A stretch of DNA of 56,092 nt, filler included, from Sluysia triapertura (lineage: Eukaryota): NCBI GenBank assembly GCA_046118255.1. It is 4 parts of 4 records of this genome, joined end to end, with 100 filler letters (N's around TTAATTAATTAA, not from the genome) between each part and the next. Parts side by side here need not be neighbours in the genome. Positions count along the whole stretch, not along the records: positions 16,514 to 28,516 come from JBJNIA010148275.1; 3 more parts are not named here. One strand, written 5' to 3'. Both the position numbers and the translations under genes were made by a program. Below are positions 3,810 to 28,516 of the stretch, piece by piece (position 1 is the stretch's first letter; each line of letters begins with the position of its first letter). A model generated the notes under the pieces. That model worked only from the letters and a program-made list of their open reading frames with translations. It had not been told where the DNA came from and ran no database searches.

Positions 3810-4323
3810 ATAAGAATAAAATGAAAATATAAATATTTAAACAAAGTAAAAAATACTTTATATAAATGTATATTATTTTTCCATTTAATTTAGATAAATC
3901 CAATTAGATAAATACAAAAACCATTTTTAATTTTAACTGTGCATCAAATTTGAAGTATTATTATCCAATATCGCTAAAAAAATTTTTTATATATTTTCAA
4001 AAATATTTTAAAAAATTAAAAGTAACAAAATATACTAATGATGAAAATAGTATTAAAATAAGATATTAAAACTTATATTAATTTAAATTTTATTTAAAAA
4101 AATAAATCATTAAAAAATATTTCATTAGAAAATTAAATAAATTTTGATTAAAAAAACATTAATCTAAGGTCTGATTTCAAAAGTAATTGGAAAAAAATCA
4201 AATTGCCATGTTTTTAATAATTTTTTTGAATTAGTAAATTTCGTATTATCGCTTGAAATTTTTTAATTTCGCCGTATTAAATTAATAAAATAATTAATTC
4301 TTTTAGTTTAGTACAAATTTTAA

Positions 4324-4397
4324 TTTGAATGGTAAGGTGTATGTAGGTTTTCAAAGTTGTAAAGTTATGTGACATCATCATTATTCAATGTTATGAT
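4324..4397 (+). mobile_element. Short fragment of the same LINE ORF1 family
   Basis: TTTGAAT.GTAAGGTGTATGTAGGTTTTCAAA...CAATGTTAT is shared with 21641-21715. Confidence 0.65.
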
Positions 4398-5559
4398 TTC
4401 TTGTAATTGATGAATGTAACACCAAATTAGATGACATTATAAAATTTAAATTATAAAGCACTGAAGATTCTGTAAACTTGTATAAAATAGCATTCTATAA
4501 CGTGTTAGTGTGTTTTTCGAATTCTAACCTCACTATTTATACTTTTTCGGTATTTTGATCTTTAAAAATTAATTATTTATTCAGATTTAATAAATATTAT
4601 TTAATTCTTTATTCACTTCAGATTGTATTTAAAATAAATATTAATATTTAATTAGTGATAAAGACCAGATTATAATTTTCTAATTTCATTTTAACTGTAT
4701 TACTTTTACATTATAGTTTGAATACTGCAATCATATTTTAAGTATTAAATTAATTTAAATTTCAACAATTACAATCTAAAAATTAAAATATAATTTATAA
4801 TTTCTAAAACATAATTTATCGAATTTATCTTCACCAATACAAGATTTCATTAGATGCATAAACTTTATCCTTCAGATGTGTTATCAGTCCCAATTGTTTA
4901 TTTTTTAAGATGATTTACAATTGTTGGATTCATATTATCAGTCAAACATTTTTCTTGCGAATGAGAACTGTTGGGATTGTCAAGCTGTGAATCAGAAGAT
5001 GAGTGGGGGATATGTGGAACCAGAGAGTGAAGGAAGAATTGATACGAAGTGATAGATTGAGTATTATAAATAATGTTGAAGTAAGAATTATGAAGATGAA
5101 AACATCTATATCAATGTTAACAACTGAGGAATACTTGGGATTTTCAAAGACCTATATAAGGTATTGAGGCTTTATGGATTTGTGTTGAGGTGTATATTTT
5201 CTATTTATGTTTTGTGTTTTATGTGGTTTGTATAAATGATTTTGATTGGTATATATAAATGATTTTATTAGAATAATTATTTTTATTATAATAAATTTTA
5301 ATTTTATTAATCAAAATAAATTTTAATGTTTAAAAATCAATATAAATATTAATATTTAAAAATGTAAATTAAGTATTATTAATATTTTAGAATATAAATT
5401 TTAATATTTTTAAAATATGAATATTTTAATATTTGAAAATTTTAAATTATTTATTTCAATAAAATTTTTAACAAAAATTTGTTTAAACAAATCAATTAAA
5501 TCAAAAAGTAAGATGGAGTCTTAAAAATAGTATAAATTTAGAAAGAAGATCAGAACAAA

Positions 5560-5870
5560 ATTTTCATAAAAGTTTTTAAGGAAAGTTATTTTGAAGAAAT
5601 TTCAATTTTTTGACGGAACATTTAAAGCTATTCCATGAACAAGTAATTTTTTATCGCCTACGTTTTAAAGATAATTAAATTAAATCTCACGTAAATTTCA
5701 GAATATTTTATACTACACCTTAAAAAGGCTAGGGAGATCTAAAGCTAAAATTAAATACCACATCAAGGAATCTAACGTGAATTTTTAAAATATACATATG
5801 CATTGTAAGTTTACTTTTATTTCGGCTTTTGTAATAGAAGCATTAAGGAGTTGCTTTTATTTTCAATTCA
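5560..5870 (+). mobile_element. Possible MULE/Mutator transposase remnant
   Basis: TTTGACGGAACATTTAAAGCTATTCCA encodes FDGTFKAIP (MULE DGTFK motif) at 5609-5635, with a degenerate C-F-x-F segment near 5850. No open frame remains. Confidence 0.4.
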
Positions 5871-8800
5871 TAAAATATTTGTTAAAGACTTAAAAAGCTA
5901 TTTTAAAATTGTAACATCACTTCATTTTTTCAAAATTAGATCGTACAAGGCTAGTGTGATTTCAAAAATTCTATATACTAGACCATAAAAAGGTTAGTGA
6001 ACTATAAATTAAATATTTAGAAACGAAAGTGAGAATAAATTAGTAAAACAAAATTAACTGTACGTGACCTAGTATTTTCAACTTAAGCAAATTATCTTTT
6101 TTTTCGTAGTTCTTTTGAAAAAATCGTGATAGCACGTCTTTAGCATTGATATAAATCGTGTATTCTAGGCGAACCGACTCTCAGATATTTTGTAGGTGCA
6201 AGAATTTAAGTATTTTTAGGATAAAACAATAAATTAGCATTTTGAAAGCCTGAGATCATCTGAAACATTAATATTTGAAATATCTATAAGCATTTAAGAC
6301 CTTTGAGTAACCTTATAAAGCAGCTGAAATCTTTAAAATATTGGAGAAATAAAATCATTGTTGCTAATATTAATGTAATATTAAAAAAGTAATCAGAGTG
6401 GTGAAATGAAAGCATCTGAAACTTCCTGAGTAGTAAACAATTTTAGAACCTTAATAAAACCTTTAAACATAAAAATAAGCTTAAGTCTAATGTTGGGATT
6501 GGTGAAGGATAAGGATAGATATGAGTCAGAACTCAGGACAACAGAATAAAATAAACATCATTGAAGAATTCAGATAAGATATTATGATGAATAGTAATAA
6601 TAAAATAAGCTTATAAGATACTTGAATTAAAATAATAAATAAGAAATGTGAAGAAATAACCCTTTTCAAGGTTTTATTTGTTAAAATATTAAAGTACATT
6701 TGTTAATTAAATTAGATTAATTGATAAAAATTATAATTTACTTAATTAAGAAAAGTACGTTTTTGTGAATAAAGTTTGATTACGGAATACTATGCCAAAG
6801 TGAAAAATGTGTATGTTTATTTTAAAGATCTTTTGATGAAGGTATGGTTTGACAAAGTCAAATTTTAATTAATTTTTAATTATGGAATGTTGAATTTTTT
6901 ATACTTAGATTGATGAAAATATAATGAATTGAATGTGGGATAATTGCTATGTATTTGGAAGTGAGTTCGAAAAGCCTTAATAACCTTAAACATTTTGCAT
7001 AAGAAAATTGGATGCGAAAAATCAAATATAAATTGAATTCTAAAAACTAAAATTAAATTAAATAATACTGGTGATTGTTACTTTAATATGAGAAGTAATT
7101 TAAGTAAAAATAAATCGAGTAGAGTAAAGGAAAATAATATATGATAAAATCAATTTATTGTATTCTGAATTTGGTAGAGTTTGACAGACCGTACCTTGTA
7201 ACTGTCAAAGTTATTATTGCCTGTCTAATTCTCAAAGAGTGTTGTAATGGCTTGTGTGAGATAATGTTTGATTGTAAACCTTGAGAAAGATTGAATGATG
7301 AAAAGTATAAAATGAGTACTTGGAAATTTTGCACTCATTAAGAATATCAACCACGTTGCCAACACGAGATCCAATGATGATTTCATGATATGGTAAAATT
7401 TTTGATTTATACTATTTTTTAATATAATTTTGTTTGTAATACCACATTAAAATTATAAATAAATATAAATTATTTATTGTTTTCATTTTGCTGCTTTAAA
7501 GTTATTTTAGAAAGGATTAATTACTTATCAATAAAAAAGGAATCCTCATTTTTTTATTAAGTATTTTTAAAGATTTTCCACATCCATATAATTAAAATTA
7601 TTTTTTTGGGAATTCCTTGATTGTTTAAATTGTTTCCGGGAAGATATTGGAATTTAATAAATTGTTAATTCATTAGTATTAAGATATATTTAAATCAGAA
7701 TTATCTTTGGGATATTTCCTGATCAATTTATTTCTAAGGATATATTAGAATTTCCTTTAGTGTGTAAAGTTTTATTTTCTTTTGGTAAATTACTAATATT
7801 AGTGATTTCATTAGTGATTTGGTATAATAATATATTTTTAACACCGAATTTCATTTTTTGTGATTTCTTAGCAATTGTTGTGCTCGAATATATTTTCTTG
7901 TTTTGATTTGATAAATGTTGTATATACATAAAACTATAGGAAAAAATAAGTTTGATTTGGAATTAATATAGAAGGATTAATAAAATAAGAATTTTAGATT
8001 TACCGATAAAATAGAGAAATAACACGACCTTATGTAAAGAACTTTTAGAAGGAAGCAAATAGGTTAAATGAAAAAATTCATCTTTCTCAAAGGATTGATT
8101 ATAGTTTTGGTTCATTAACTTCATGATGAATTTTTTTAGTCAAGATCTGTTGATTAGTACTAATTTTGCCTATTGAACTTTAGTGATATTTTTATGTTCA
8201 ATACAAAATGTTCAGTTTGTAAACTGTAGTCAGGTAAAAATTTTAAATGTTCCAATATCTTATTCGCTGATGCACGTGTTTCTTTAGATGTAATAGCACA
8301 CTTTATGCTATTATACTTGAAAAATTTACAGTATACGACTTACTAATGGCGTACCTGTAAAAATTAAGTGAAAGTAATTATCAAAATTAATCGTACAAAA
8401 GATGCTTCGCCTTAACTTAACAATAATTGGCAAACGTAGTTCAAGTAAATAGAATTCTGCGGTCTTAATATTTTTTATTGCACAAAAATTATAATAAAAT
8501 AAAATTAACACAAATTCACAAAAATACGACAAAAATGAATATTAATAATATAAAAATATTAAAAATGATAAAATTATAATAGCGATAATAAATGAAATAT
8601 AATAAAGGTCTAGCCCAGAAGACTCTACCCTACAATATCTATTTTATAATTGACCTTACGGGCCAACTAAAGATTCGAAATTTTATATTTTAAATGGATT
8701 TTGTGATTGGCCTTAATGACCAACCGTGAAAAAGGATATTTTACGTGTATTTTATGACTATACAAAAAGTTGATAACTTTTATAATATAAACTTACGATT

Positions 8801-11800
8801 AACCAATAAACACGAAAAATAGATAATTGTTTCTTCTTCGAAATTATGTGTTCTATGGAAAATCGTTCCCTTTAATCGTAGACGCGGGACACGATTTAAT
8901 CACCTTGATTTATAAATTGAAGATTTGTTGGATTCCTCGAGAAGGACGATCTAATATTGGATGATTGATGTTTGATGAAATAAAATGGCGAAGTGACTTC
9001 TTTGTTTTCCAAATATGATGAATTGCAATGAGTATTGTTGATTGTTTTATTTGTGTCTTTGTTTTCTTTGACTGTCTTTATATAATGATAAAGACATTTT
9101 TAAGTTTTTATTTCAATGAAACAAACTTCTTTCTAGAAGTTTCTTTTTATGTATTTTTTAATTTATAATAATACTTTTAATTTTGTTATAATTAAAATAA
9201 TAATTTTTTAAATAATATGAATTTTAGTAATTATTTATAATATTTTGTAATTTTAAAAAACCATAAAAATATAAAATGTAAAGTATAAAATTATGTACAC
9301 CTTTACATAAAAATACTATAATTTTCTTTATTACTTTATTAAAAATTAATTTAAAAATGTTACAACCTAATTTTAAAATAATTTTAAAAAAACTATCCAA
9401 AAATTTACAATTATTTTTTTTACAAAAGTTTATAATATTTATTATAATATTTAATATTTTCTACATTACAACATTTATATTTTTACAAAAGTTTTACAAT
9501 AATTTAACCATAATGAATTTACATATTTACAATATTCTGAAAATATCCTCAGAATATATAAAAAATTCTAATTCTTTGAATCGGCTATTTCGGTTTTTCG
9601 GATGCTTGTTATTTAGTTTCCTTCTCCAAATAACTGTAACTGTCCGTACTTATATTGATATTCCAATTTACGAAATTTCGCGTTAAATATAATGATACAA
9701 CCCATTATCTTTCATCAAGACTTTTTCTCGAGTTTTAAAAGTTACCGATTACCGGTCTCACATCTTCCAAATATAACAACCTTGGACCTTTTCATTTTAA
9801 AGTAAGATTATTAAATCTAGAGTTTTAAACATTAAAGAATAAATATTGAAGAATATAGATGGCACTTAGGGCACCTTAGAACATTATTAATTTTCATTAG
9901 AAAATTTAAGGGATTCTTATTTTTATTAATAAATAAATTCAAATTATGATAGCATTTAAAGCCTTGAATAACACAATTACAAATTTAAAATCTTTAATAA
10001 AATAAAATTACATGTGTGCGACTTAAAATTGACAGAATCTATGTACTTGTTAATTTTAAGATAAAAATTTTGGGTTGCTAAATCATGAAAATAAAAACGA
10101 AAGCGTTTATTAAAAGCTTTCATAAAAATTTTATTATACAATTCATCAAATCCTTCGCATGACCTTTATCACATTAAATCGAATGAGAAACTGTCGATTT
10201 GGCACAATCTGCACCTTTATCTAAATTTAATAAATGAATTAAACAGATATTTCTATTTGAATGAATTCAGAATATCATCGAACTTCTTTTATGAGAGATT
10301 TAAAAACACAAGCCTTAATCCAAAACTGCCACATTTTATTGTTTTCCATGAACAATTTAAATTTCAATTCACTAAATATGCGTATTTTAAAATAACTATC
10401 TTCTTAATTAGTAACATCAACGTTATTTTTAATTTTATTCAAAATTACGTAGATTCCATTGTCAAATGATCTATCAATTGAATTAATACCAAAGGATTCT
10501 AAATCTATTACTAAATATTTTCGTAATGCTAGATGTTGAATTACTAACTTTTAATCTCCATGATTCAAATTTGACTTACAATAACTATCTTCTGTATTTT
10601 TATAAATAACGTTAGGCATAAAGAATTTGATCAACACCATTCTTTATATCATTTATTGATTACGAGGATCCCGGACTATTACGACCTTCGTGTATGTCAA
10701 TGTCTTTTTCCAATGTTCACAATGCATATTTAAAATATTATATAGACTTTGGTTTTATTTTGATTTAATTCTTAATGTTCAAACAAAAACAAGATTTATA
10801 ACGAATCATAAAATAATAATACAAATTATTAATAATAATAATTTTTGCAAAATTTTATTTATAAAGGTTTTAGAAAAATTTAGTTTTTAATTTAATAAAA
10901 TGTTTAATAATAACATCAATTTAGTAATAATTGGTGCAAAATGCAAAAGGAAAAATAATATGGTGGAAAATTGAATGTGAATGTTATATTGTTATTATAT
11001 AGTTTTCTATTGTATTTATAAAGATGCAAGAGGGTTTTGTGGACAATATAATGGATGTAAATAATAACTGCACCGCGGATAGAAATTGAATATTATTTGA
11101 TCGTCATTCGTGTAACAAAATATTTAAATATACATTATCACTTATTTGATATTCTGTTAGCATTTCCTGCGTCAGTTGCATTTTTCGTATTTTCTTAAAA
11201 TTATCTATATACTTTCTGGATACCCTGTAAATTCATTGTTTATATCTAACATTTTAATAATACAATTATTTGCTTTGCCTTAATAAAAACAATATTAATT
11301 TATAACAAAATAGAAATATAGTTTTATTTTTCAATTAGGGTTCCAAGGAAATTATTGGATACACTTTGGGATGTTTATCGTCTTTATTCTATTGTAGTGC
11401 CAGAATACCTCAAATAGTTATGAACGTTAGTTGATCTAATAATAATTATTTTTTTTATTATTTTTATTATTATTATTATGGTGGTGGCGATAGTAGTGGT
11501 GGTAACTTTTGCCTCCCAGATGTTTGATTGATATTATTCGTCCACAGTGCGAACAGTTTCCTTAAATGAGTTTGTTATCTTAAGTATAAAATTTTAAACT
11601 ATAAATTTAAATTATATGCTCTGGGACTTGTAATATTTATGCTGTATTACGGTTTATTTCAAAAATAGCACATTTTAATGAAAGATATGCTATTTTGGGT
11701 AAAATAAGGTGAATGAGCTACAAACTCGTGTTTAAAATATTATTGAAATTTGTATTTATTTACTAATAGTCAAAGTTAATAGTGGTTAGTTAATCAGAAT

Positions 11801-14800
11801 ACATGAGTCTCGCATCACTACAATATCAGCTCTCACTTAATCCAAAAATCAACACTACATATACAATTTATACAAGAATGTGATGAAGATTACATTGTTT
11901 ATAATTACATGACCACCCGAATGAATTTTCATTTTCTTAAGTAGCGTTCAGCATGATCACACAAGCCTATTTATACAAGAAAAAGTGGATATCATTCGAC
12001 TGTCCGAAGATATATCCGAATGATACCACCTTTATCTTGTAGTGATGCTGATGCTAACTATTACTAAATAATAGTAATCATCAGCATCACAAAACCTATG
12101 TATAAATGTAAAATATAACTATGATTTCACTTTAAGAATTTTTTTGGTTGTACGATTTTTAATTTAAGAATTTCATTAAGAACGTTACTTAATCTATTAG
12201 AAATAACATCATATTTACTAATAATATTATTGCTACTGTTTATTCTATAAAATTCAATGACAAAATTTCTTAAAATGTCATTTTGACACATAAAATAAGG
12301 ACCTCTTAACTTAAGGTCAGTAATTAATTTTAACTTTGAAATTGTTATTTTGACTATTCAAATAAAAACATTTATATTGAAATTTTATTAAAAATAAAAC
12401 CGAACTTGGTAGTTAATAATCTTTAAACACGAAGGTGATCACATTCTGCAAGATCAAATTGTCTTGAACTGAAACAAAGTCTTGTAAAATAAAATTGTCA
12501 CACATAATTTTTAATGTATGTTTAACATGTAGGTAATGTAACAAAGTTATTATAAATTCAATTAAAATTATAAAATTCAAATAATCTTGAATTCATTCTA
12601 AAATACTAAGCTACAAATTTATTGGTAGTACTTCTACATTTTAACATAAGACTTGATAGAACATTTTTACTATTTAAAATTCAATGTCTAAAATCAATTT
12701 TGTTACAATCTTAATTATAGAAATAAGCCATCGACATACATTATTCTTCATCTTACAGAAATCAGTCTCATTTATAAGTGAACTATCACTAAACAATCCG
12801 TTAAATGCATGAAACCAACATTTATCAAATAATTTAAGTACTAATACCTAGATTACATAAGATATTACACAAACACTTCATTAAACCAAATACGCATTTG
12901 GCAAATTATTTTGATAATTACTACATAAAACATAATTCTAATAATAGGAACTTCTTCAGACTTAAGCATCATTTAATCAACATATTCTCCAGTATATTTG
13001 TATTCTGTTAAATGGTAGTGAATAGTATAATTATACAGATATTCTAATTTGAACAAAACTTGATTTTCAACACTTATTTCCTCATTGTCTATTATAGAAT
13101 CATAAAATGGAACATCATATGAACTAGGTAGTTGAATATTTTTACGAGAATTAATTTATATTTATTTTACTTAAATTATAAGTTAAAATTTAAGTCATTG
13201 AATGGATATTTTGAAAGTCCAAAGATATCTTCCTTACTTATGTATTGCCTAATTTTTCATGGATAATTTTTATCACTATCATTATTAAAGTTACCATCAT
13301 CTTTTTTAATTTTAATTAATTTAAAATTTGGAAACAATATCAGGATATGCTGAACACATGTCTACTTTGATTGTAAATGTTTGACAACATCTTAACTATA
13401 ATTGGTCATATTCTTCGCTTTATATAATTTAGCAAAATTCGAGCACCCATTCTATATTACTGTTTAAAATTTTACTCTCCTTAATTATAATCTGTGTTTA
13501 TTAGTTTTTAGTAGTTGTTATAACTTAGTTGAACTCTTTCTAATTGTCAATAACTATATTTCGTATTTAATTTTTTAAATTTAATTTAATTTTTCAATTT
13601 AATCTGATGGCCGAAATTTTTTCCTGTTTTTATTATTTTAACTAACACTTTTCCAGATGAAAAAATTTGTATATCCATCTTCTATCTGATCATACCTCAT
13701 CTGCCAATCACTTTTGAAATCATTAACAAAACCAAAACACATACATATTACATATAAATTACCCATTCTTGATTTGATTGCGTGATTAATTTTGCCTCCA
13801 GTTTATATAATTATATAATTAATTATATAATTAAGGCCATTTTGAATTTTGTTAAATATTATTATTTATAATTATTATTATTAATTATTATTATTATTGC
13901 TGTTATTTTTATATTTATAAATAAATACACATAAATTAAACACTTATAAATTCTGGGCTTTGTAACAAATCTCTAAAAATTTTCTAGTTTCGGCATAATT
14001 TTTTTTGACTTCAAAATTTGTCTTTAAAATAACTAAGTCTTTTCAAAGTGATCTGAGCATTCTGTATTCCATGATGTTTCTGTTTCTTTTACATTCACTT
14101 TTACGTCTTCTGTACTTGATTTTCTTTAACTAGGAAAATCATCCATCTTGGTTTTTAAATGAAATTAATTTTTAGTATTAGTATTATTAATTATGATTAT
14201 GATTATTATTTTTCATTATGTTATTACATAAACTGCACTTAATTTCTTGTTATAAATTGAATTTTTCTATTTGTTTCTTCAAGAATTTCGTAATACATCT
14301 GTTCTTTATTTTGTTCGATTCTGACGAATGTATTTTCTAAATCGATTTGATATATTTTCAAATTAGAATTAGATGATGTTGTGAATTATGTTTGCGCTTA
14401 TTTTTGAATGATTTGGTTTTTCACCATTGGATTTAGTTCGTTCAATAAATTGATTGTCATCAATAATGTCCGTATTAAATTTCGATACATTTTGATTCGA
14501 TAAAGGTGGATTCAATAAACTTTTTTTATTACCGGAATGAAGACCATGATGGTGATTCTGTTTCGGTTTTTTCAGTACTAACTGTTTTCTTAAGTATCCT
14601 CTCCCTATTGTTGCTGCTTCTTATGACTATGATGACTCTTCATTTTGTGATTTTGCAATACTTTCACAACCCAATCTTTGGCTTTCTGAACAACAAGACT
14701 CCATTTACAATTGTTCTGTTTTATTACAGTATATAGTTATCGTCATGCACACATACAACCAGGTTTATTAATTAGATCCATAATTACTGATTACTTGTTA

Positions 14801-16513: not shown

Positions 16514-17612
16514 ATACTTTGATAATTAATGCCGAATAATCCATAACATTCACTCAATAGTCATTCTCTCAAACCAAACCACAACCATAAGACATAATAT
16601 GTAAATCACAAATACATTAACACCATTCAACAACATTAACATAGAAAACATTTTCGTTATAACTTTTAATCACTTACACTAATCCAAACTCATTTCATCT
16701 ACACATAATCATTATCAACATTTTTCAACATCACACACATGCTAAGATATATTTTGTAATTGTCATTTAAATTTAATAAACTACAACCTTTTAATAAGTC
16801 TCTCAAACCAATATATTCAGTGCATAAATCTTATTCTCAATTACAAACTTTAAATAAATCTCAAGAATTTATTCTAACATCCTTCATTTCACGTATAACT
16901 CAAATTATTCTGTTTATCTTCAAAAATAAATCTAAAATAACTTTAAAGAATTCATTGCCTTAGTGTGAAGCAACAACGATAACCGAGACGTAGTATACCT
17001 CGTTACCGTTGCTCCTTCACAGCATGTCATCTGTTTTTGTTTCTTTTTTACCTGATATGTAGAAAATTAAAGAATCTAAAAGAAAAGATGATGTTTTGTA
17101 AAGATAACAAGAGATTTTATGCAATTACTTTTACCTAATAATGATAATAATAACAATATTGTTATTGTTATTATTATTATTATGAAACATTGAAATGATT
17201 TTTGTCAAATATAATTTGAATTAAAATTGCAATTAAATGTAGATCAACCTGGTTGTTATCATCACCAGTGTTGACACTATACGTCACATTTTTCATTATA
17301 GTGTCACCACTGATGGTGGTCAATCACCAGTTTTCTCATCCTTGATTTGTAATTGGAAATTGCTATACATCACCCAATCAGATTACATACTTCTGAAATT
17401 ACTTAGTAGTACTCTGATTGGGCAAGCCAAAAATAGACTAGTGGTGATAATAATAACTCAAATAAGTTAATAACAATACACAAAAGAATTGGTAAGAGTA
17501 AAAAAATTAAACAAAAATAAAAAAATTAAACAGTGACAGTTGAAAAAGAGAAAATATTATTATCACTGTTATTATTGTAAATATTTATAATAATAACACA
17601 GTTTCAAACACC

Positions 17613-18971
17613 GTGACAATTCCAAAAATTAAAACTACAGAAAATAACGTAACTACAATGGAAGTGATCCGAAAAAGGACATTTACGAGATGGATTGATC
17701 CTATTTTTCTTAAATCAAACAGTTTTAATTTTTATAAAACGCAGCTCGGTTATCTTGATTACATAGTCACATTTTGTGAAACATCAGCTCCAAAAATAAA
17801 TGTCGTTTTTATTTCTAGATCAGTACTACGTGATTTGGAACGAAAATTAGTATGCACATTGATTGATGATAATTATTCAGAATTCGATTTAAAACATGTC
17901 GAGGTACCTCAATTCCGTAGAATTATAAAGTATTTAATCAAACCAGTATTTCCCAATAAAGTATTAGCTTATTCACGAATTCTAGACTATGCTTTTAATC
18001 CTAACAAAACTGTGGATGTAGAAACCAATTTTTATCATACTCATATCAGTCAATCATCATCGTTATGTGTACATGATTATATACCGAAATGAAATTATGA
18101 TGATAATCAAATATGTACATAAAGTTCTCGATGTCCTGCAATTCCTACAGAACAATTACAGAATGCTTCAAGTTGCAACTTTTCAATTAATCGTTACGCA
18201 CATGTCAGAAGAACAATTTCGTAACCTAATCTCATTAAGTGACAGTCAATTCCGGGACGACACTACAATTTTAGTTCTATTACAAGCAGATATTAGGACG
18301 TTCAAAGACATGATCAATCTGGGTCTAGACATTTTTACGTGGATATTGAACAAATAAGTGAGCCCCACTTACTTAGACGACTTAAAGTTTGCATGTTACC
18401 CTATATATGAAACCTTAACAAAAGGTCTCAAATCAATGATGCAATATCAATACTTAGACAAAGTATTACAATTAAAGTTGTATATAAGTGATTTGACAGA
18501 TGTAGTAGATTTTGAGTTTATTTTTACAAACGTTTCTAATATTGAAACAATCAACGTGAGTTTTAACTTAATATATTCAATAATCTTTAATTCAGTTTAT
18601 AAATCTACCGAACGGATTCGTGAAGCTAAACAGAGTGTGGTATGCAAAAATGAACGTGGAGAAAGAGGAGATGAGGAAGAAGACAAAACATCTAATTTGA
18701 ATCTAAGATATTTAGTGATTAAATATATACCAATCAATGTATTTTTATTAAATCTTCAAATTTAAATGTTAAAAAGATTTTTTTGTTTTTGCATAAGGTT
18801 GTAATAAATATAAATATGTTAAAATTGACAAGATTAAACGCAGATAAACTTCCTAATACTGTGGAAGTCCATTCTATCCAATTCTTGGGTAAGTACTTTA
18901 AGACTTTTAGTTCATTAAGAGACGTTCATAATAGGTTTAAACATAGAGAACATATCGATACATTTTATTAG
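17613..18971 (+). pseudogene. Intronless orphan ORF (~450 codons) broken by frameshifts and in-frame stops
   Basis: Four consecutive same-strand ORFs: 17613-18092, 18067-18357, 18358-18765 (in frame with the previous one across a single TAA) and 18783-18971. Protein-like composition, but no family recognised. Confidence 0.55.
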
Positions 18972-21329: not shown

Positions 21330-23900
21330 AGAATGGCACCTTATTAAGCGACTTGGCTGATAAGGAAAGTATTAAATCAGCTAATGATGACATTAACCAA
21401 TCTTATCTTAACTGAAAGTTCGAAAAATCATATGTAGTTCTACCTAAAATTGTAATTCATGATGTAAGTAATGATATTAGTGATAGTCATATAATAACTG
21501 ATATCACTGATGAAATATAGAATTTAAAATATTAGTTAAAGAAGGTGAAACTTTAGACTTCATGTTTTCTAGACCTAGCCGAGACGGATTTTTAAAAAAT
21601 TTTCTATTAAAGTCGAATACAAAACCAAGAACTATTTCGGTTTGAATTGTAAGGTGTATGTAGGTTTTCAAATTTATTAAGTAATGAGTCGTTATGATAT
21701 TATACAATGTTATCACTGCAAGCTTTAGGTCTCATTGCTCATAATTACAGGTATACATTAAAGGATCCAACCTGTTTATATTGATCTTAAAATAATAGAG
21801 GGAAAACTTATCCGAATAGTGGTGGTATTGAAAAATTAATTGACATTGCTCCAGTTAAATATAAATATTTAAACATATAGATTAAATATTACTATGACTA
21901 GACCACCTAGTAATTCAATTAAAGAATTTTTTAGATGAATTTTATGATTATTTGGATATTATTTTGGAAAAGTCAAAAAAGAAGTTTTAATAACAGGAGA
22001 CTTTAATATAATAATGAATGACGAATGTAGAACAAGTCAGACATTCATCCAATTACTAAATATATTCAATTTAAAGAACAGTGTAACATTTAAAAATCAT
22101 TACTGTGGATTCATTAACAACAAATAATGATAGTAATATCGTTACTGATACAAAAATGAATGAACTATTAGATATATCTTATTATTTATTTACTATTAAA
22201 GTAGAATTTAAGATTACCAATTATGTTTGGCGTAAAGATCTTGAATATAGAACATTATCAAAAAATGATATTGAAGAGCCGAACACAGACGACATGGATA
22301 CATTAAGCATTTTATACAACAGGACACTGGTCTTTTATTTAAACAAACATGCTCCTTTGAAATGTATTGTTGTAAAATGTGGTGTTAATGAAAAATTTTG
22401 GTTTGGTTCTGAGATTACTGAGCAACAAAAAATAAAGCAATGCAAAGAAAGGAAATAGAGAATTTGAAAAAATGATGAAGCAAAGAAAGAATACATACAA
22501 TCTCTTTTTATATCCTATTCTAAGCCATTAAAAAGAAAAATTGGATTTTTATAATAAGTCGTTTGAAGCCAATAAATTAAATATTAAGGGGATTTATATT
22601 TAATTAATAATAATTAGTTATAGAAATTTTATAACTCTGTTCAGAAACGAAACTATCTCTTCTTTTTTCATTTATTTAGTGATAATTTTACATTAAAATC
22701 TTTTAGAATATTCAATAGAGTCAAGTTATGCATATCATTTATAATCCTGCACACGAGTTTAAATGATGAGCAATAGTATTGTCAATTTTGTTTTTGAAAA
22801 CCTTTTAAATATTCGTTTCAATGCCAAATCTCCATAAATTCATGGATATATACGATTCATAAACTGCATAGTCAGAAAATGTTATGTTAATCAGTTTATT
22901 TCGTCATCCGTGTTTCAATTATACAAATCCACCTATCTAAATTCACCATCGAAACTCTATGCACACAGAAATCTGTTGTCTTTCATTTTCTCTTTACCGT
23001 AAATATATTTTGTTTAACGACCATTTCAAAATAAGAAATTTTAATGATAATCTATGTCTTCATATTCTAAATGTTGTTTCTAATTTGTCTGTACGTATGA
23101 AATATATCCCCCCTCTTATGTTGATTAAAATTCATGTTTTTAAAATTGGTAATATATGTGTTTATCGTGTTTATTTTATTTCGAATTCTTAGTCAGAAAA
23201 TTACTTTAAAATTATGTTAAAGTTACGTGATAGATACTTTGATCTTTCAAATTAATCATAGACATTTCAGTAAATGTTATGTATATGATGATGTGCAAAA
23301 ATATACTGTATTTGTAATGAACAACATAGAAAATAATATTCAAAGTACTGAAAAACTAGTATTTGAATTGATAAAATGGTTTGGAAATCAATACATGAAA
23401 ATCAATGAAGAAAAGTCAGAATGTATGATCTTCAGTTAAAAATAGCTAAAACGCCAAAATAAATGAAACAAAGTTATTTGTAGGTAGTAAAACACTGTAT
23501 GTGAAGCACAAAATACGATATATAGGCTATTATATTGATTCAAAAATGAACATGGAATAACATATTAATTGCATTGTTAAAAGTGTAAATAACAATTAAA
23601 GAAATATCGAATATTCGAAAATTTATTAATAAATAAACACCTAAACTAATTGTTTATTCATTAATGATTACAAATAATAATTAATCAAGCATAAAGATTA
23701 ATTCTCAAGTGCGAAGGAGATTTCATGCAACACCTTTTCTTAAGGAATTTCACTGGTTGCCAATAAAAGCAAATGTAGAATTCAAAATCATGACAACAAT
23801 TTACAAATGCTTACCTTACGGAAGTCCTGAATATCTCATTCAGACAATAATTTCTATAGAATCTGAGGTGATTCAAACCTTTCATTTAAAATTTCACTAA
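21330..23900 (+). mobile_element. Decayed L2/CR1-group LINE: ORF1 zinc knuckle, APE endonuclease, RT C-terminus; interrupted by another repeat
   Basis: LPKIVIHDV and KVYVGF...IIQCYHC..LG (knuckle remnant) at ~21440-21750; RPPS...EF...ITGDFNI at ~21900-22010; KHAPLK at ~22345; YDDVQ (YADD-like)...WF..QYMKINEEKSECMIF at 23281-23436; FHWLPIKANVEFKI...YKCL...PEYL at 23749-23838. Many stops and frameshifts. Confidence 0.8.
22640..23190. repeat. Unclassified dispersed repeat occupying the position of the LINE RT core; paralog at ~27265-27640
   Basis: 22650-22850 aligns by eye with 27265-27460 plus 27606-27633 (shared ATCTTTTAGAATATTCAATAGA, CAATAGTATTGTCAAT, CAATGCCAAAT). Confidence 0.7.
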
Positions 23901-24183
23901 AATGGAATAAATATCATAAAATATTTAAAATAAACAAAATATCAAACAAATACACAACCGCATAATTTTGTTGTCATAGAATTTATTGTTATTATATTGG
24001 AATTTAATGTTTTAATATTTATTTGTTTATTGTTTAGTACTTTATAAATTATGATACCAGACATTAATTTACAACAAGCATTATTAAATTTAAAAAGTAT
24101 TAAAATATCTATCTTTTTAAAGGTGGACTTAAGGTCCTTGATAATATAAACCGAATAAGAAAAATACAAAAAATCTCCACATA

Positions 24184-25113
24184 TTATGCGAACTGTAAAA
24201 ATAACAGCAATAGAACGAAAATGACAGATAATATAAAAGACGACGTACAATATGAAATGTGAGACGTCGGAATCATCAGTGTCTCGCGGAACACGGCATA
24301 CAAGTTCCTTTCATTCTCCATGCGATCCACCTGTCTCATAAATAAGCTAGTTACCAATTCATCGATACTATCTGACGCGTCTACGCTAAAGCTTGATAAC
24401 TTAAACGATTCTGAATAAAATATAATCCAATAGTATCATCTAACTGACGTCATTAACCGTTTGTTGCATAATTATACACAAGTCTTTTCTTTCAAGACTT
24501 CACAAGCATATACTCTTTTAGTCTTTAATTCACGTGAATTCAAATTTAAAATTTTAAGTAGTCTTTTTGTTTTATTGTTTAAAGACAGTACAGTCGACGT
24601 ACTTAGTGACGGTCGTGCGGTCACACGACTCGCAATTGTCGTCAAATGTGCAACGGACTTTACATATTTTGCTCCATAACTCTTTTTCTGAAACATTCGA
24701 AAAAAGAAACAATGAAATTCAGTAAATAAGACACTTTTAGAATTTTCATAATAATATTTTAAATTATCACAATCTCTTAAATCTTCTTGCAAATTAGGCA
24801 ATTTGATGTGTATAACTTGATTATTTAACGTATAATAAACACAATGAACATTTTTACAAAACATTAGTCTAACTGTTTGACAACAATTTTCAAAATTACT
24901 AATGTTTCTAAAAATATTTGGAATTAGTCTAGAACCCTTCACGGATTCCATTATGAGAAAAGTTTCGTCTCTAAAAACATCATCGAAGAGAAATGTTTCA
25001 TCTCCGTCAATGTTAATTCTAAGAAATGTTTCATATCTAACGACTTTAATTCTGAGAATTGTTTGATCTTTAACAATGCTGTAATCTATTCTGAATCTGT
25101 TTAACATTTGCAT
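24184..25113 (-). pseudogene. Intronless orphan ORF (~310 codons) with 11-aa repeats and a hydrophobic C-terminus; two in-frame stops
   Basis: The 213-aa ORF continues in frame past TAA (24472-74) and one TGA into YYWIIFYSESFKLSSFSVDASDSIDELVTSLFMRQVDR...SSFILSVIFVLLLLFLQFA*. Confidence 0.5.
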
Positions 25114-27460
25114 AAAAAAATCATAATATTTGAAATTAAAGTCTCAATAACTTTTATCGTGAATATACATCATCTGAGCCGTAATACGAATATTTTCATA
25201 TTTTTTAGAACATTTCAGAAAAATCATTAGATAGTATTTTAGGAAATATATAAAAATATCAATTGAAAATGAAAATATGATAAGAAAATTGAAATAAAAT
25301 TAAAATTTAAAATAAAATTAAAAATTATAATAAAAATATTAAAAGTTAATTAGTGCACCAATTATAAATTTAATAAATTATAAACAATGAATCAATAAAA
25401 CAAATTTCAACAATTTTACTTAACAATTTTTGATTAATTTATATAATTTTTAATTAAAAATAATTTTTAATTGATAGGCAATTTTTAATTTAAACATAAT
25501 TTTAATAAAAAACAATTTTTAACAAAAAAGTTAAGTTTGCCAAAAAGACTTTCATTTAACATGTTGAACTCGGAGTCCCGGTGGCTCGTACTTGAAATTG
25601 AAACATAAGTAAAAATAAAAATAAATAAAAAAAGATAACTGGTAATGGTGATGATGAGAACTGATTCAACAAAGGCATAATATTTACGTATTTCATTAGT
25701 ATAATTTTATCAAGTTAATATGATTTTATTACAAGATTTTGTGGCTTGAAGTTTCATTATTTATGAATTCTGTAGAGTACAATGAATTAATAATGCGTGA
25801 CGTTCATTTGGTATAATATAATAGCTGGTAAATTTAATGGTTAATAACTTAAATATATTTTAGTGTAGGATTTTTGTATTGAGTAAATTGAAGTGGTGAT
25901 ATGTAGAAAATATTTTATATGTAATTAAGTGTGGCTTGAATTATGAGTTGTGTGAATTTATGTATGAGAACGATGATGAGATTATAATGTGTGGTTGAAA
26001 CACTGCACCTACAACACCAACATTTAAACCTCTAAAAACTTAAAATTAAACAGAAATTAAGTACCATTAAAATTTCTATTGAGCACTCTTAACTCTTCCC
26101 ACCCTTCTACCTATCTTTCAATTCTCTGTCTCAATGTAAACTAAACAATAACAGCACAAAAGATGTATATTCGCCATCATTGCACAGTCGTCATGGATCA
26201 GTTGAAAATAAACAGTGTAATTTCAAATGTGAGAAACTTTATTCAATAGTTAATATTTAATTAATGTTGAGCTTAACAAATCGTCCAAGTTGAAACAAGA
26301 GTCTTGATTAATAAGTTTAATTAAATTTCCAAACACATTTAAAGAATAATATGAATTACTTTAATATTAATAAGAGAATATCAAAAAGAAAATATCATTT
26401 TTATCAAAGTTCCTTTGATAAATTAGTTCAAGCCGTTCTTTAACGATATGAATAAACTGTTGAATAAATAGGATAACAAATAACACAATATGAAAGAGAA
26501 CATGTAAACATAAAAATCGAAATTCAAAATCGAAAACACATAATTGATGGTCTTTAACTAAAATTGGATAACATTTCACTAAGAATAGACGAAATAAATC
26601 TTAAATTATTATTAAATCTAAATTATGGATCAAAACAACATAAAACAAAATATTTACGACAATGTAAAGATGACATAATATTTTTGCTTGTAAAACGTCA
26701 AGTGCATTAATAGGAAAAATCGATAATCAATATAAAAAGATCGAATCACTTAATGCAAAGATTAAAAGGTCACTGGAATAATTTGGGTTCTTAAAAGTCG
26801 AAGCTTTTCCACAATACAATTTTAAGAAATTTCTAATTTTAACATACTGAATCGTATTGATAAAAATAGGCTACTAAAATTAGTAGTTAACACAACAAAG
26901 ATTGGCTCAACAAACTTTAGAATTTACCACGGTAATTTTACTTAATCAATCATTGATTTGCACAAGACAAGTTTAGTAACGACAAGAATAATTACTTGGT
27001 AATCTACTCAGCGAATAAAGTCGTAATATGGCAATTAAGTAATTAAATCGATGTAGAGAGAAATCAAGTTAAATTGTTCAATCGGATGTAAGACAAACCT
27101 TACGATTTATTACCGGTATATGTACATCCATTGAATATTATTACAAAATACGTTCGGCTATTATTTTATCACATATATAAAGTTATGAGCAAAAGTAAAA
27201 TTATGTTGAAATCGTAATTATCTGTATAATTTTCGAAGAAATTTTTTAACCCTATTCATAAACAAAACTGTCCCTTCTTTTATTCATTTCTTTAATGATA
27301 ATTTTTCATTAACATCTTTTAGAATATTCAATAGACTCACTTATTTTATGTAATAAAACTTATGCGAAACATTTTAAATCCTGTACAAGAATTTAAATGA
27401 TGAATAGGCGAACAATAGTATTGTCAATCTTGTTTTTGATTATCTTTTCAATATTTGTAT

Positions 27461-27601
27461 TGATGGACTGACCGGGGATCGAACCCGGGCCATCGTCTGC
27501 GCAGTCGATGCTCTACCACTGAACTATCAACCCGTCTAACAATTTCATTTTTATTAAATTCAATTTTACTAAATGGCACTTTTAGGCCTTTTGCCCCAAC
27601 A
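27461..27601 (-). mobile_element. Putative solo LTR of a tRNA-bearing TRIM (Helenus-like), copy 1
   Basis: On the minus strand it starts TGTTGGGG and ends ...CAGTCCATCA. It is flanked by a GTAT duplication (27457-60, 27602-05), and the paralogous host repeat has the empty site at 22815-18. It contains a tRNA-like cassette with A and B boxes. Confidence 0.75.
27464..27533 (-). pseudogene. tRNA-derived sequence (Ala/Cys-like) inside the element; probably not a functional tRNA
   Basis: Acceptor stem GGGTTGA/TCAGTCC, D arm GTTCAGTGGTAGAGC, T arm CCGGGTTCGATCCCCGG. The anticodon/variable region is ~2 nt short with a non-canonical loop. Confidence 0.7.
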
Positions 27602-28516
27602 GTATCAATGCCAAATATCCATACATCCATGGATGCATCAGTCGTTTAATAGATATATAATGTTATTGTATAAATTTATGTAAGAAAAAATGTGTTAAAT
27701 GTTATAAATTTGTATTTGTATAAATTTATTTTGTAAAATGTAAAATATTTTAAAAATTTTCTGAAAAATTATTTTAATTTTAAATATTTGTTTATTAGTA
27801 TTATTATTATTTACTCCAGAAAATTATTATTTATTCCAAAAGTTATTATTTTTGCTTAAATCTTTACTTTTGTTTAAATTTTATAGTATGTCAAGGTCAC
27901 TATACAACTATAAATAGACCATAGTTTAATGGCCGTAAAGCGTCAATTATGATAAATTTTTTATATTAATCAACTCATTTGAGGTAAACATGAATCATAT
28001 GAAACAGTATAATTACAAGCATCAAATATGGCAAGACATGAATTTGAAATTACAGAGTACTTTATAATTACTGGTTTATTTGAATACATACAATTTTGAC
28101 AACATTCAATTCGTCTAACAAAATTAGTTTCACCAAAGCATTTTTAGCACAAATAAGGCCTGCACCTCCTTATGTAGAATAATACAAATTTCGAAATACA
28201 ATAGCAATAAATATAAGATAAACAATATTTACTGTTTTAATCATATAACTATAGCAAATTATTGATTTTTTGCGTGTTTTAATAATTTCCTAATATATGA
28301 ATTTATATGATTAAAAAATTATACAACGATCATTGAAGAATTACTTAAGTAAAGCAATGCAGATATATAATATTAAAACAAAATAATTTAAACTTTAAAA
28401 TAATGCCAAGTGCATAACTAAATAATGTATTTAAATAAAGTCTAGCTATACAAAGCCTTTGGCCATAATTTAAGGATTGATATAATTCGGAATGATGAAT
28501 AGATAATTCTATTTGA

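What the first reader, a model, noticed from the sequence alone, without database searches (positions are those of the whole stretch)
27457..27605. tRNA-cassette-bearing TG...CA element with a 4-bp TSD confirmed by an empty site: candidate solo LTR of a tRNA-derived TRIM retrotransposon
Seen: a 141-bp element that starts TGTTGGGG and ends CA on the minus strand, with ~68 bp of non-tRNA leader followed by a tRNA-like cloverleaf with intact Pol III A and B boxes. It is flanked by GTAT...GTAT. The host repeat has a paralog at 22800-22850 reading AATATTC-GTTT-CAATGCCAAAT, against AATATTT-GTAT-[element]-GTAT-CAATGCCAAAT here, which fixes the boundaries and the 4-bp duplication. Known: SINEs put the tRNA head at the 5' end, have a tail and variable-length TSDs, whereas TG..CA ends with short fixed TSDs indicate an LTR integrase. 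Cassandra TRIMs carry 5S sequence in their LTRs; from memory, Helenus TRIMs carry tRNA-like sequence and make 4-bp TSDs in animals. Inference: a Pol III-driven non-autonomous LTR element in this reduced animal genome, probably not annotated in this lineage and easily miscalled as a tRNA or SINE.
Basis: partly seen in the sequence, partly recalled or inferred. Interest (0 to 1): 0.8.

Follow-up and report, generated by a model that had tools for sequence, protein, structure and literature searches.

The report
Probable solo LTR carrying a tRNA-like promoter
A 141-base insertion made of a short leader plus a degenerate tRNA copy, with TG...CA ends and a 4-base target duplication, is most likely a solo LTR of a Helenus-type miniature retrotransposon, a kind described in 2024. 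This could not be proven because no other copy of the genome could be read.

Summary
The 141-nt element at 27461-27601 reads, on the minus strand, TGTTGGGG, a 68-nt leader, a 70-nt tRNA-like sequence, then TCA. It is flanked by GTAT on both sides. A 75%-identical paralog at 22815-22818 has a single GTTT at the same point, an empty site.

The tRNA-like part scores 47 bits against Rfam tRNA. It has intact A and B boxes but an 8-nt anticodon loop, so it is probably not a working tRNA.

Contigs of one public run pile up on the element at a summed depth of 90,000-330,000, against about 50 in the flanks. At least 35 contig variants keep leader and tRNA-like part adjacent. The repeated unit therefore includes the leader, which rules out a classical head-first SINE.

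Size, termini, TSD length and the position of the tRNA-like part all match published Helenus LTRs (Kojima 2024; animal LTRs 104-266 bp, 4-bp TSD). Helenus-2_PiNo has a 121-bp LTR with the tRNA-like part 5 nt from its end. Helenus-2_MyGa has TGTTG...ATCA termini.

[quoted passage not shown] All searches for other copies came back blank.

Verdict: probable new member of a known kind, with about 0.5 confidence. The "reduced genome" claim is not supported.

The parts
27461..27601 (-). The 141-nt inserted element, a candidate solo LTR. It reads 5'-TGTTGG...CCATCA-3' on the minus strand, and the termini form an imperfect inverted repeat (TGTTGG / TGATGG).
   Evidence: It is absent from the paralog at 22815-22818.
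27534..27601 (-). A 68-nt AT-rich leader (29% GC) upstream of the tRNA-like part. It would be U3 if the element is an LTR. It has no TTTT run on the sense strand.
   Evidence: The mean contig depth of bin 27517-27716 (about 184,000) cannot be reached by the tRNA-like part alone. 35 contig variants run from a tRNA-like 5' end into this leader.
27464..27533 (-). A 70-nt tRNA-like sequence with intact A box (27526-27516) and B box (27485-27475). It has an 8-nt anticodon loop, and its anticodon arm is nearly palindromic (27491-27510). It would be R/U5 if the element is an LTR.
   Evidence: ARAGORN; Rfam 47.2 bits; box positions; palindrome; folding.
27461..27463 (-). The terminal TCA following the discriminator base. 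It differs by one base from a CCA tail and supplies the CA end of the element.
   Evidence: read directly from the sequence.
27457..27460 (.). Left copy of the 4-bp target-site duplication, GTAT.
27602..27605 (.). Right copy of the 4-bp target-site duplication, GTAT.
22815..22818 (.). The empty site (GTTT) in the paralogous low-copy repeat at 22622-22899.
27237..27679 (.). The host low-copy repeat that received the insertion. It is 75% (left) and 69% (right) identical to 22622-22899.
   Evidence: Contig depth is about 50 on the left flank here and 27 on the paralog, so this is not a high-copy element.

Best explanation
The element is a solo LTR of a non-autonomous LTR retrotransposon that carries a Pol III promoter, of the Helenus / TRIMp3 type.

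Proposed layout of the LTR: the 68-nt leader is U3. The tRNA-like sequence, with A and B boxes, starts transcription and serves as R/U5. The LTR ends 3 nt after the tRNA-like 3' end.

Proposed history: a full element (LTR, PBS, short internal region, PPT, LTR) was reverse-transcribed and inserted by the integrase of an autonomous, probably Gypsy-type, element. That integration duplicated GTAT. Recombination between the two LTRs then left a single LTR.

Shown here: the insertion, its termini, the 4-bp duplication, the tRNA-like content with promoter boxes, and a high copy number of both halves.

Inferred, not shown: the LTR nature, Pol III transcription, the integrase partner and the recombination step.
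For: - The insertion boundaries, the GTAT duplication and the empty site are clear.
- TG...CA ends plus an identical flanking 4-mer occur only once among 11,842 possible 141-nt segments of the piece.
- Helenus in animals gives 4-bp TSDs, and its LTRs are 104-266 bp. Helenus-1_CGi, for example, is also 141 bp.
- Published consensus LTRs share the layout of TGT, leader, tRNA-like part, short tail, CA. Helenus-2_PiNo and Helenus-3_PiNo (121-122 bp) end 5 nt after the tRNA-like part. Helenus-2_MyGa starts TGTTG and ends ATCA.
- The tRNA-like part keeps its promoter boxes but has a non-canonical anticodon arm. Most Helenus LTRs are described the same way.
- Summed contig depth is 270,000-330,000 on the tRNA-like part and high over the leader, against about 50 in the flanks. 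35 contig variants keep the leader next to the tRNA-like 5' end. The unit therefore includes sequence upstream of the Pol III start, which a SINE cannot copy and an LTR does.
- A unique contig from the left flank runs exactly 32 nt into the element and stops at 27492. With 31-mers, that places the start of shared sequence at 27461-27463, within 2 nt of the boundary set by the TSD.
Against: - No second copy was seen base by base, so consistent termini and TSDs, a two-LTR copy, a PBS and a PPT are all unverified.
- There is no Pol III terminator (T run) between the tRNA-like part and the LTR end, unlike most animal Helenus consensus LTRs.
- No motif from the leader occurs in the published Helenus consensus file, so there is no sequence homology to a known family.
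- Contig depth sums all organisms and all related families present in the run, and it is not a copy number.
- The implied abundance of about 10^4 copies is above the largest published Helenus family, which has 5,575 LTRs.
- The lack of TTTT on the sense strand is not significant: shuffled sequences lack it 66-73% of the time.
Confidence: 0.5

Rival explanations
1. It is a LINE-mobilised retroposon. One version is a 5'-truncated copy of a composite or dimeric tRNA-related SINE whose last module is the tRNA-like part. Under this reading the TG start and the 4-bp duplication are incidental.
For: - The genome carries a very abundant LINE, with fragments at 21948-22597 and 23221-23900 and contig depth up to about 690,000.
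- Related tRNA-like variants with other 3' continuations exist in the run, as shown by the loose end at 27490.
- Dimeric tRNA SINEs are known (Twin SINE of Culex; from my own knowledge).
- The element ends one base away from a CCA tail, which suggests an RNA intermediate.
Against: - There is no A-rich or simple-repeat tail.
- The tRNA-like part sits at the 3' end, not the 5' end.
- TG...CA ends with a short inverted repeat and a 4-bp TSD are the integrase signature.
- The leader shows no similarity to the LINE in the piece.
Confidence: 0.2
2. It is a self-contained small retroposon, not an LTR. Its RNA ends in a tRNA-like, CCA-type structure that a reverse transcriptase uses as its start site. 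The whole 141-nt unit is what moves.
For: - The unit ends exactly at tRNA-like 3' end plus TCA, one transition from CCA.
- Shared sequence with other copies starts within 2 nt of that end.
- There is no terminator and no U5-like tail inside the unit.
Against: - No precedent is known in animal nuclear genomes.
- A Pol III start at the tRNA-like part could not copy the leader.
- Several published Helenus LTRs also end a few nt after the tRNA-like part, so this feature does not need a new mechanism.
Confidence: 0.1
3. It is not mobile. On this reading an ordinary tRNA pseudogene with its upstream region lay in the ancestral repeat and was lost from the paralog by deletion between short GTAT repeats.
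For: - Only two copies of the host repeat are available, so the direction of the event is inferred.
- A 4-bp direct repeat arises by chance about 1% of the time.
Against: - Leader and tRNA-like part are both high-copy while the host repeat is low-copy.
- The unique contig ends 32 nt inside the element, so the element shares exact 30-mers with other loci, while the host repeats are only 75% alike.
- A deletion removing exactly the element plus one repeat, and leaving TG...CA ends, is unlikely.
Confidence: 0.08
4. It is a miniature DNA transposon (MITE) of a superfamily that makes 4-bp TSDs and has TGT...ACA-type ends, such as Ginger (from my own knowledge).
For: A 4-bp TSD, a TGTTG start, and a 5-of-6 terminal inverted repeat TGTTGG/TGATGG.
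Against: - The inverted repeat stops after 6 nt, whereas Ginger TIRs are tens of bases long (from my own knowledge).
- No transposase remnant lies nearby.
- tRNA-like content with intact Pol III boxes is unexplained by this model.
Confidence: 0.04

Closest known systems
Helenus (TRIMp3), Kojima 2024, Biology 13:119 (PMC10886601)
   Same: - TG...CA ends and a 4-bp TSD, as in all animal Helenus with a determined TSD.
- A length of 141 bp, within the animal LTR range of 104-266 bp.
- A leader followed by a tRNA-like sequence with conserved A and B boxes that probably does not encode a working tRNA.
- The tRNA-like part lies close to the LTR 3' end, as in Helenus-2_PiNo and Helenus-3_PiNo.
- Termini TGTTG...ATCA, as in Helenus-2_MyGa.
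   Different: - Only a solo copy was seen; paired LTRs, a PBS and a PPT are unverified.
- There is no T-run terminator or U5 tail after the tRNA-like part.
- The leader is very AT-rich and shares no motif with any published consensus.
- The apparent abundance is higher than any published family.
- The host lineage is unknown.
Cassandra and Ajax (TRIMs with 5S rRNA-derived LTR promoters)
   Same: The same concept: a small-RNA Pol III promoter embedded in the LTR of a miniature LTR retrotransposon.
   Different: - They carry 5S-derived sequence, not tRNA-derived.
- They give 5-bp TSDs.
- Cassandra occurs in plants and Ajax in nemerteans.
tRNA-derived SINEs (SINE2), including dimeric forms
   Same: tRNA-like sequence with A and B boxes, high copy number, short length.
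   Different: - SINEs begin at the tRNA-like 5' end and have a LINE-related or A-rich tail with variable TSDs.
- Here a conserved leader precedes the tRNA-like part, which ends the unit, and no tail is present.

Membership tests
Helenus / TRIMp3 | tRNA-like sequence with Pol III A and B boxes inside the LTR | tested here: met
   Rfam tRNA scores 47.2 bits and ARAGORN calls a tRNA. The A box is at 27526-27516 and the B box at 27485-27475.
Helenus / TRIMp3 | LTR termini 5'-TG...CA-3' with a short inverted repeat | tested here: met
   The ends are TGTTGG...CCATCA. The same TGTTG...ATCA ends occur in Helenus-2_MyGa.
Helenus / TRIMp3 | 4-bp target-site duplication (animal families) | tested here: met
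   GTAT flanks both ends, and the paralog shows an empty site. This rests on one insertion only.
Helenus / TRIMp3 | Two LTRs flanking a short internal region with a PBS and PPT | not testable with these tools
   Only one copy lies in the 12-kb piece. Collection scans and protein routes to other contigs were all blank.
Helenus / TRIMp3 | An interspersed repeat family with the same boundaries at many loci | tested here: inconclusive
   Contig depth is 3-4 orders of magnitude above the flanks on both halves, and the left boundary is supported to within 2 nt. The right boundary and the TSDs of other copies were not seen.
Helenus / TRIMp3 | Sequence similarity to a described Helenus family | tested here: not met
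   Short motifs from the leader and the anticodon-arm junction are absent from the published consensus file. Only generic tRNA T-arm motifs are shared. Helenus is polyphyletic by its author's account, so this does not exclude membership in the kind.
tRNA-derived SINE (SINE2) | The unit starts at the tRNA-like 5' end | tested here: not met
   A 68-nt leader lies inside the inserted unit and stays adjacent to the tRNA-like part in at least 35 contig variants.
tRNA-derived SINE (SINE2) | A 3' body and an A-rich, simple-repeat or LINE-derived tail | tested here: not met
   The unit ends 3 nt after the tRNA-like part, and there is no similarity to the LINE in the piece.
Functional tRNA gene | Canonical cloverleaf with a 7-nt anticodon loop and an assignable isotype | tested here: not met
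   The loop is 8 nt and the isotype undetermined. The cloverleaf costs -16.3 kcal/mol against an MFE of -24.1.

The most novel reading that the evidence does not exclude
The 141-nt unit is not an LTR but a complete mobile element of a new type. Its RNA carries a 3' tRNA-like, CCA-type end that a reverse transcriptase recognises or primes on. It inserts with a fixed 4-bp duplication and has reached about 10^4 copies.
Probability: 0.08. Interest if true: 0.8.

Novelty: new member of a known kind. Interest (0 to 1): 0.4.

Why it matters
- If confirmed, this adds a very AT-rich animal genome to the hosts of Pol III-promoter-bearing TRIMs. It may be the most abundant such family seen so far.
- These elements are easily miscalled as tRNA genes, tRNA pseudogenes or SINEs. 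They therefore inflate tRNA gene counts and distort repeat annotation.
- This LTR ends almost exactly at the tRNA-like 3' end and has no internal terminator. That makes it a compact test case for how R and U5 are defined in Pol III-driven LTR elements.

Tried and rejected
Fetching other copies, all blank:
- Exact look-up of ten ORFs from the piece in the protein collection.
- Three word-based protein searches: the ORF through the element, a 213-aa repeat ORF and a LINE ORF.
- DNA pattern scans for the tRNA-leader junction and for the anticodon arm, in metagenome contigs, genome contigs and viral contigs.
- A full-text search for four sequence strings from the element.

Ideas tested and dropped:
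- No second copy or fragment of the element lies in the 12-kb piece.
- An apparent leader-like stretch at 28101-28161 is no better than background: 14 of 122 control windows score as high.
- The leader shows no similarity to the LINE in the piece.
- The absence of TTTT on the sense strand, as evidence for Pol III read-through, is not significant.
- The whole element shows no notable RNA structure, z-score -0.9.
- The ESM Atlas gave no lineage clue for the LINE ORF.
- Pfam found nothing in eight ORFs.

Not run: the large profile search of protein representatives. The word searches already indicated that this genome is not in that collection, and the LINE is not central to the finding.

Full report
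**1. What is in the sequence**

On the minus strand, 27601 to 27461 reads TGTTGGGG, then a 68-nt AT-rich leader (29% GC), then a 70-nt GC-rich tRNA-like sequence (27533 to 27464), then TCA. GTAT lies immediately outside both ends, at 27457-27460 and 27602-27605.

ARAGORN calls the tRNA-like part a tRNA of undetermined isotype with a 4-base anticodon, meaning an 8-nt loop. The Rfam tRNA model scores 47.2 bits, E 1e-7, above its gathering score of 29. The A box TAGTTCAGTGG (27526-27516) and the B box GGTTCGATCCC (27485-27475) are intact.

The anticodon arm is nearly palindromic: 27491-27510 is 18/20 self-complementary. The cloverleaf costs -16.3 kcal/mol against -24.1 for the minimum-energy fold. 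This is a promoter-bearing tRNA relic, not a credible decoding tRNA.

**2. The empty site**

Sensitive self-comparison of the piece finds one paralogous stretch. 22622-22823 matches 27237-27465 at 75% identity (E 2e-39), and 22815-22899 matches 27602-27679 at 69% (also families D1, D3, D4 and D8).

With 27461-27605 removed, the two copies align without a gap across the junction, at 38/45 identity on the left and 32/45 on the right. The paralog has a single GTTT where this copy has GTAT, the element, then GTAT. MAFFT misplaced the gap, but the ungapped comparison is unambiguous.

A 4-bp flanking repeat alone has a chance probability of about 1%. Of 11,842 possible 141-nt segments in the piece, 123 have one, and only this segment also has TG...CA ends.

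**3. It belongs to a high-copy family that includes the leader**

One public run, held as contigs only (736 Mb), contains the locus. Laid on 22517-28516 at 80% likeness or better, summed contig depth is about 50-80 in the unique flanks (26117-27316). It rises to 270,000-330,000 at 27489-27508, falls to 94,000 at 27530, and averages 184,000 over the bin 27517-27716.

The tRNA-like part fills only 17 nt of that bin, so the leader must carry comparable or greater depth. Neighbouring AT-rich bins reach only about 800-1,400.

Thirty-five contig variants align from 27531 into the leader and carry a diverged tRNA-like 5' end just before it. Leader and tRNA-like part are therefore adjacent in many family members.

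A 764-nt contig from the unique left flank, with one mismatch, runs into the element and stops at 27492. With 31-mer contigs, that places the first base shared exactly with another locus at 27461-27463, within 2 nt of the boundary set by the duplication. The host repeat itself is low-copy, at depth 27-50.

Two caveats apply:
- Depth sums every organism and every related family in the run, so it is not a copy number.
- The right boundary at 27601 was not resolved, and I had only one reads call.

**4. What this excludes**

- **Classical tRNA-derived SINE.** It would start at the Pol III start site, so an upstream leader cannot be part of the copied unit. It would also carry a body and a tail after the tRNA-like part. 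Here the leader is part of the unit, and the unit ends 3 nt after the tRNA-like part.
- **Ordinary tRNA gene or pseudogene.** It would not have a conserved leader at thousands of loci.
- **MITE.** It would need real terminal inverted repeats, and here they stop after TGTTGG/TGATGG.

**5. Comparison with Helenus**

Kojima 2024 (PMC10886601) defines Helenus as a TRIM whose LTRs hold a tRNA-like sequence, with a PBS and PPT between the LTRs. Fungal and plant families give 5-bp TSDs and animal families 4-bp TSDs. The animal families are probably mobilised by Gypsy elements, and the tRNA-like part is mostly non-functional as a tRNA but keeps conserved A and B boxes.

Animal LTRs are 104-266 bp, and several bivalve LTRs are 139-141 bp. 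The published consensus LTRs read TGT, then a leader of 10-90 nt, then the tRNA-like part, then a tail ending in CA.

Two precedents cover the unusual features here:
- Helenus-2_PiNo and Helenus-3_PiNo (121-122 bp) end only 5 nt after the tRNA-like part.
- Helenus-2_MyGa starts TGTTG and ends ATCA.

Three differences remain:
- Most animal consensus LTRs have a T run (a Pol III terminator) in the tail, and this element has none.
- No leader motif of this element occurs in the published file.
- The apparent abundance exceeds the largest published family, at 5,575 LTRs.

**6. Most likely mechanism**

Inferred, at about 0.5 confidence. The leader acts as U3. Pol III starts at the tRNA-like 5' end in the 5' LTR, and the tRNA-like sequence is the repeat (R/U5) used for strand transfer. 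The element was inserted by the integrase of an autonomous LTR retrotransposon, which made the GTAT duplication. LTR-LTR recombination then left the solo LTR.

Without a terminator inside the LTR, transcripts from a 3' LTR would end in flanking DNA. That is compatible with strand transfer but is untested.

**7. Rivals**

- A 5'-truncated composite SINE moved by the abundant LINE: 0.2.
- A new, self-contained retroposon whose RNA ends in a tRNA-like, near-CCA end: about 0.1. The unit does end one transition away from tRNA plus CCA.
- A non-mobile tRNA pseudogene lost from the paralog by microhomology deletion: 0.08.
- A 4-bp-TSD DNA transposon derivative: 0.04.

**8. What could not be done**

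The decisive test needs other copies. I could not fetch any:
- The ORFs of the piece are not in the protein collection.
- Three protein word searches were blank.
- Six DNA pattern scans were blank.
- The piece holds no second copy.
- The host organism stayed unidentified. Run, organism and study names are coded.

**9.

'Reduced animal genome' is not supported. The piece contains LINE ORF2 fragments with GDFN, HAPLK...FWF, YVYDD and HWLP motifs at contig depths up to about 690,000, which implies a repeat-rich genome.

**Verdict**

The best reading is a Helenus-type solo LTR, a new member of a known kind, and it remains unproven until two-LTR copies are shown.

Noticed in passing
window 21948-22597 and 23221-23900 (+): These are degenerate fragments of a non-LTR retrotransposon ORF2. 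They carry the endonuclease GDFN motif, HAPLK...FWF, the reverse-transcriptase YVYDD motif and a C-terminal HWLP motif. Pfam finds nothing in the fragments tested (22105-22458, 23227-23439, 23709-23900). Contig depth reaches 300,000-690,000 over 23317-23916, and family similarity breaks at 22597 and 23836. The two fragments are separated by about 620 bp of low-copy sequence that holds the paralog with the empty site.
   Followed up: partly
window 23943-26025: Several contigs of the public run join 23901-23952 directly to 26007-26026. A roughly 2.1-kb segment is therefore absent from other copies or alleles, which suggests a nested insertion. It contains a 213-aa ORF (24472-25113, minus) with repeated ETFL motifs and no detectable relatives. 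Its contig depth is about 4,000-12,000.
   Followed up: no
window 17544-18762 (+): Three consecutive ORFs of 182, 111 and 135 aa are separated by one frameshift and one stop. Together they look like a roughly 390-aa pseudogene or transposon gene. Pfam finds no match.
   Followed up: partly
window 27491-27510: The anticodon arm of the tRNA-like part is a near-perfect 20-nt palindrome centred on TGCGCA. It sits at the depth maximum of the family (about 300,000-330,000), so it is a family trait and not a private mutation of this copy.
   Followed up: partly
window 27490 (loose end in run X1): Twenty-three contigs match from 27490 rightwards but, on the minus strand, replace the 3' half of the T arm and the acceptor with a T run (TTTTTCTG...). 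A related subfamily therefore has a truncated tRNA-like part followed by a Pol III-terminator-like run.
   Followed up: no
window 24989-25054: Two tandem 33-nt units, 76% alike, lie inside the 213-aa ORF.
   Followed up: no
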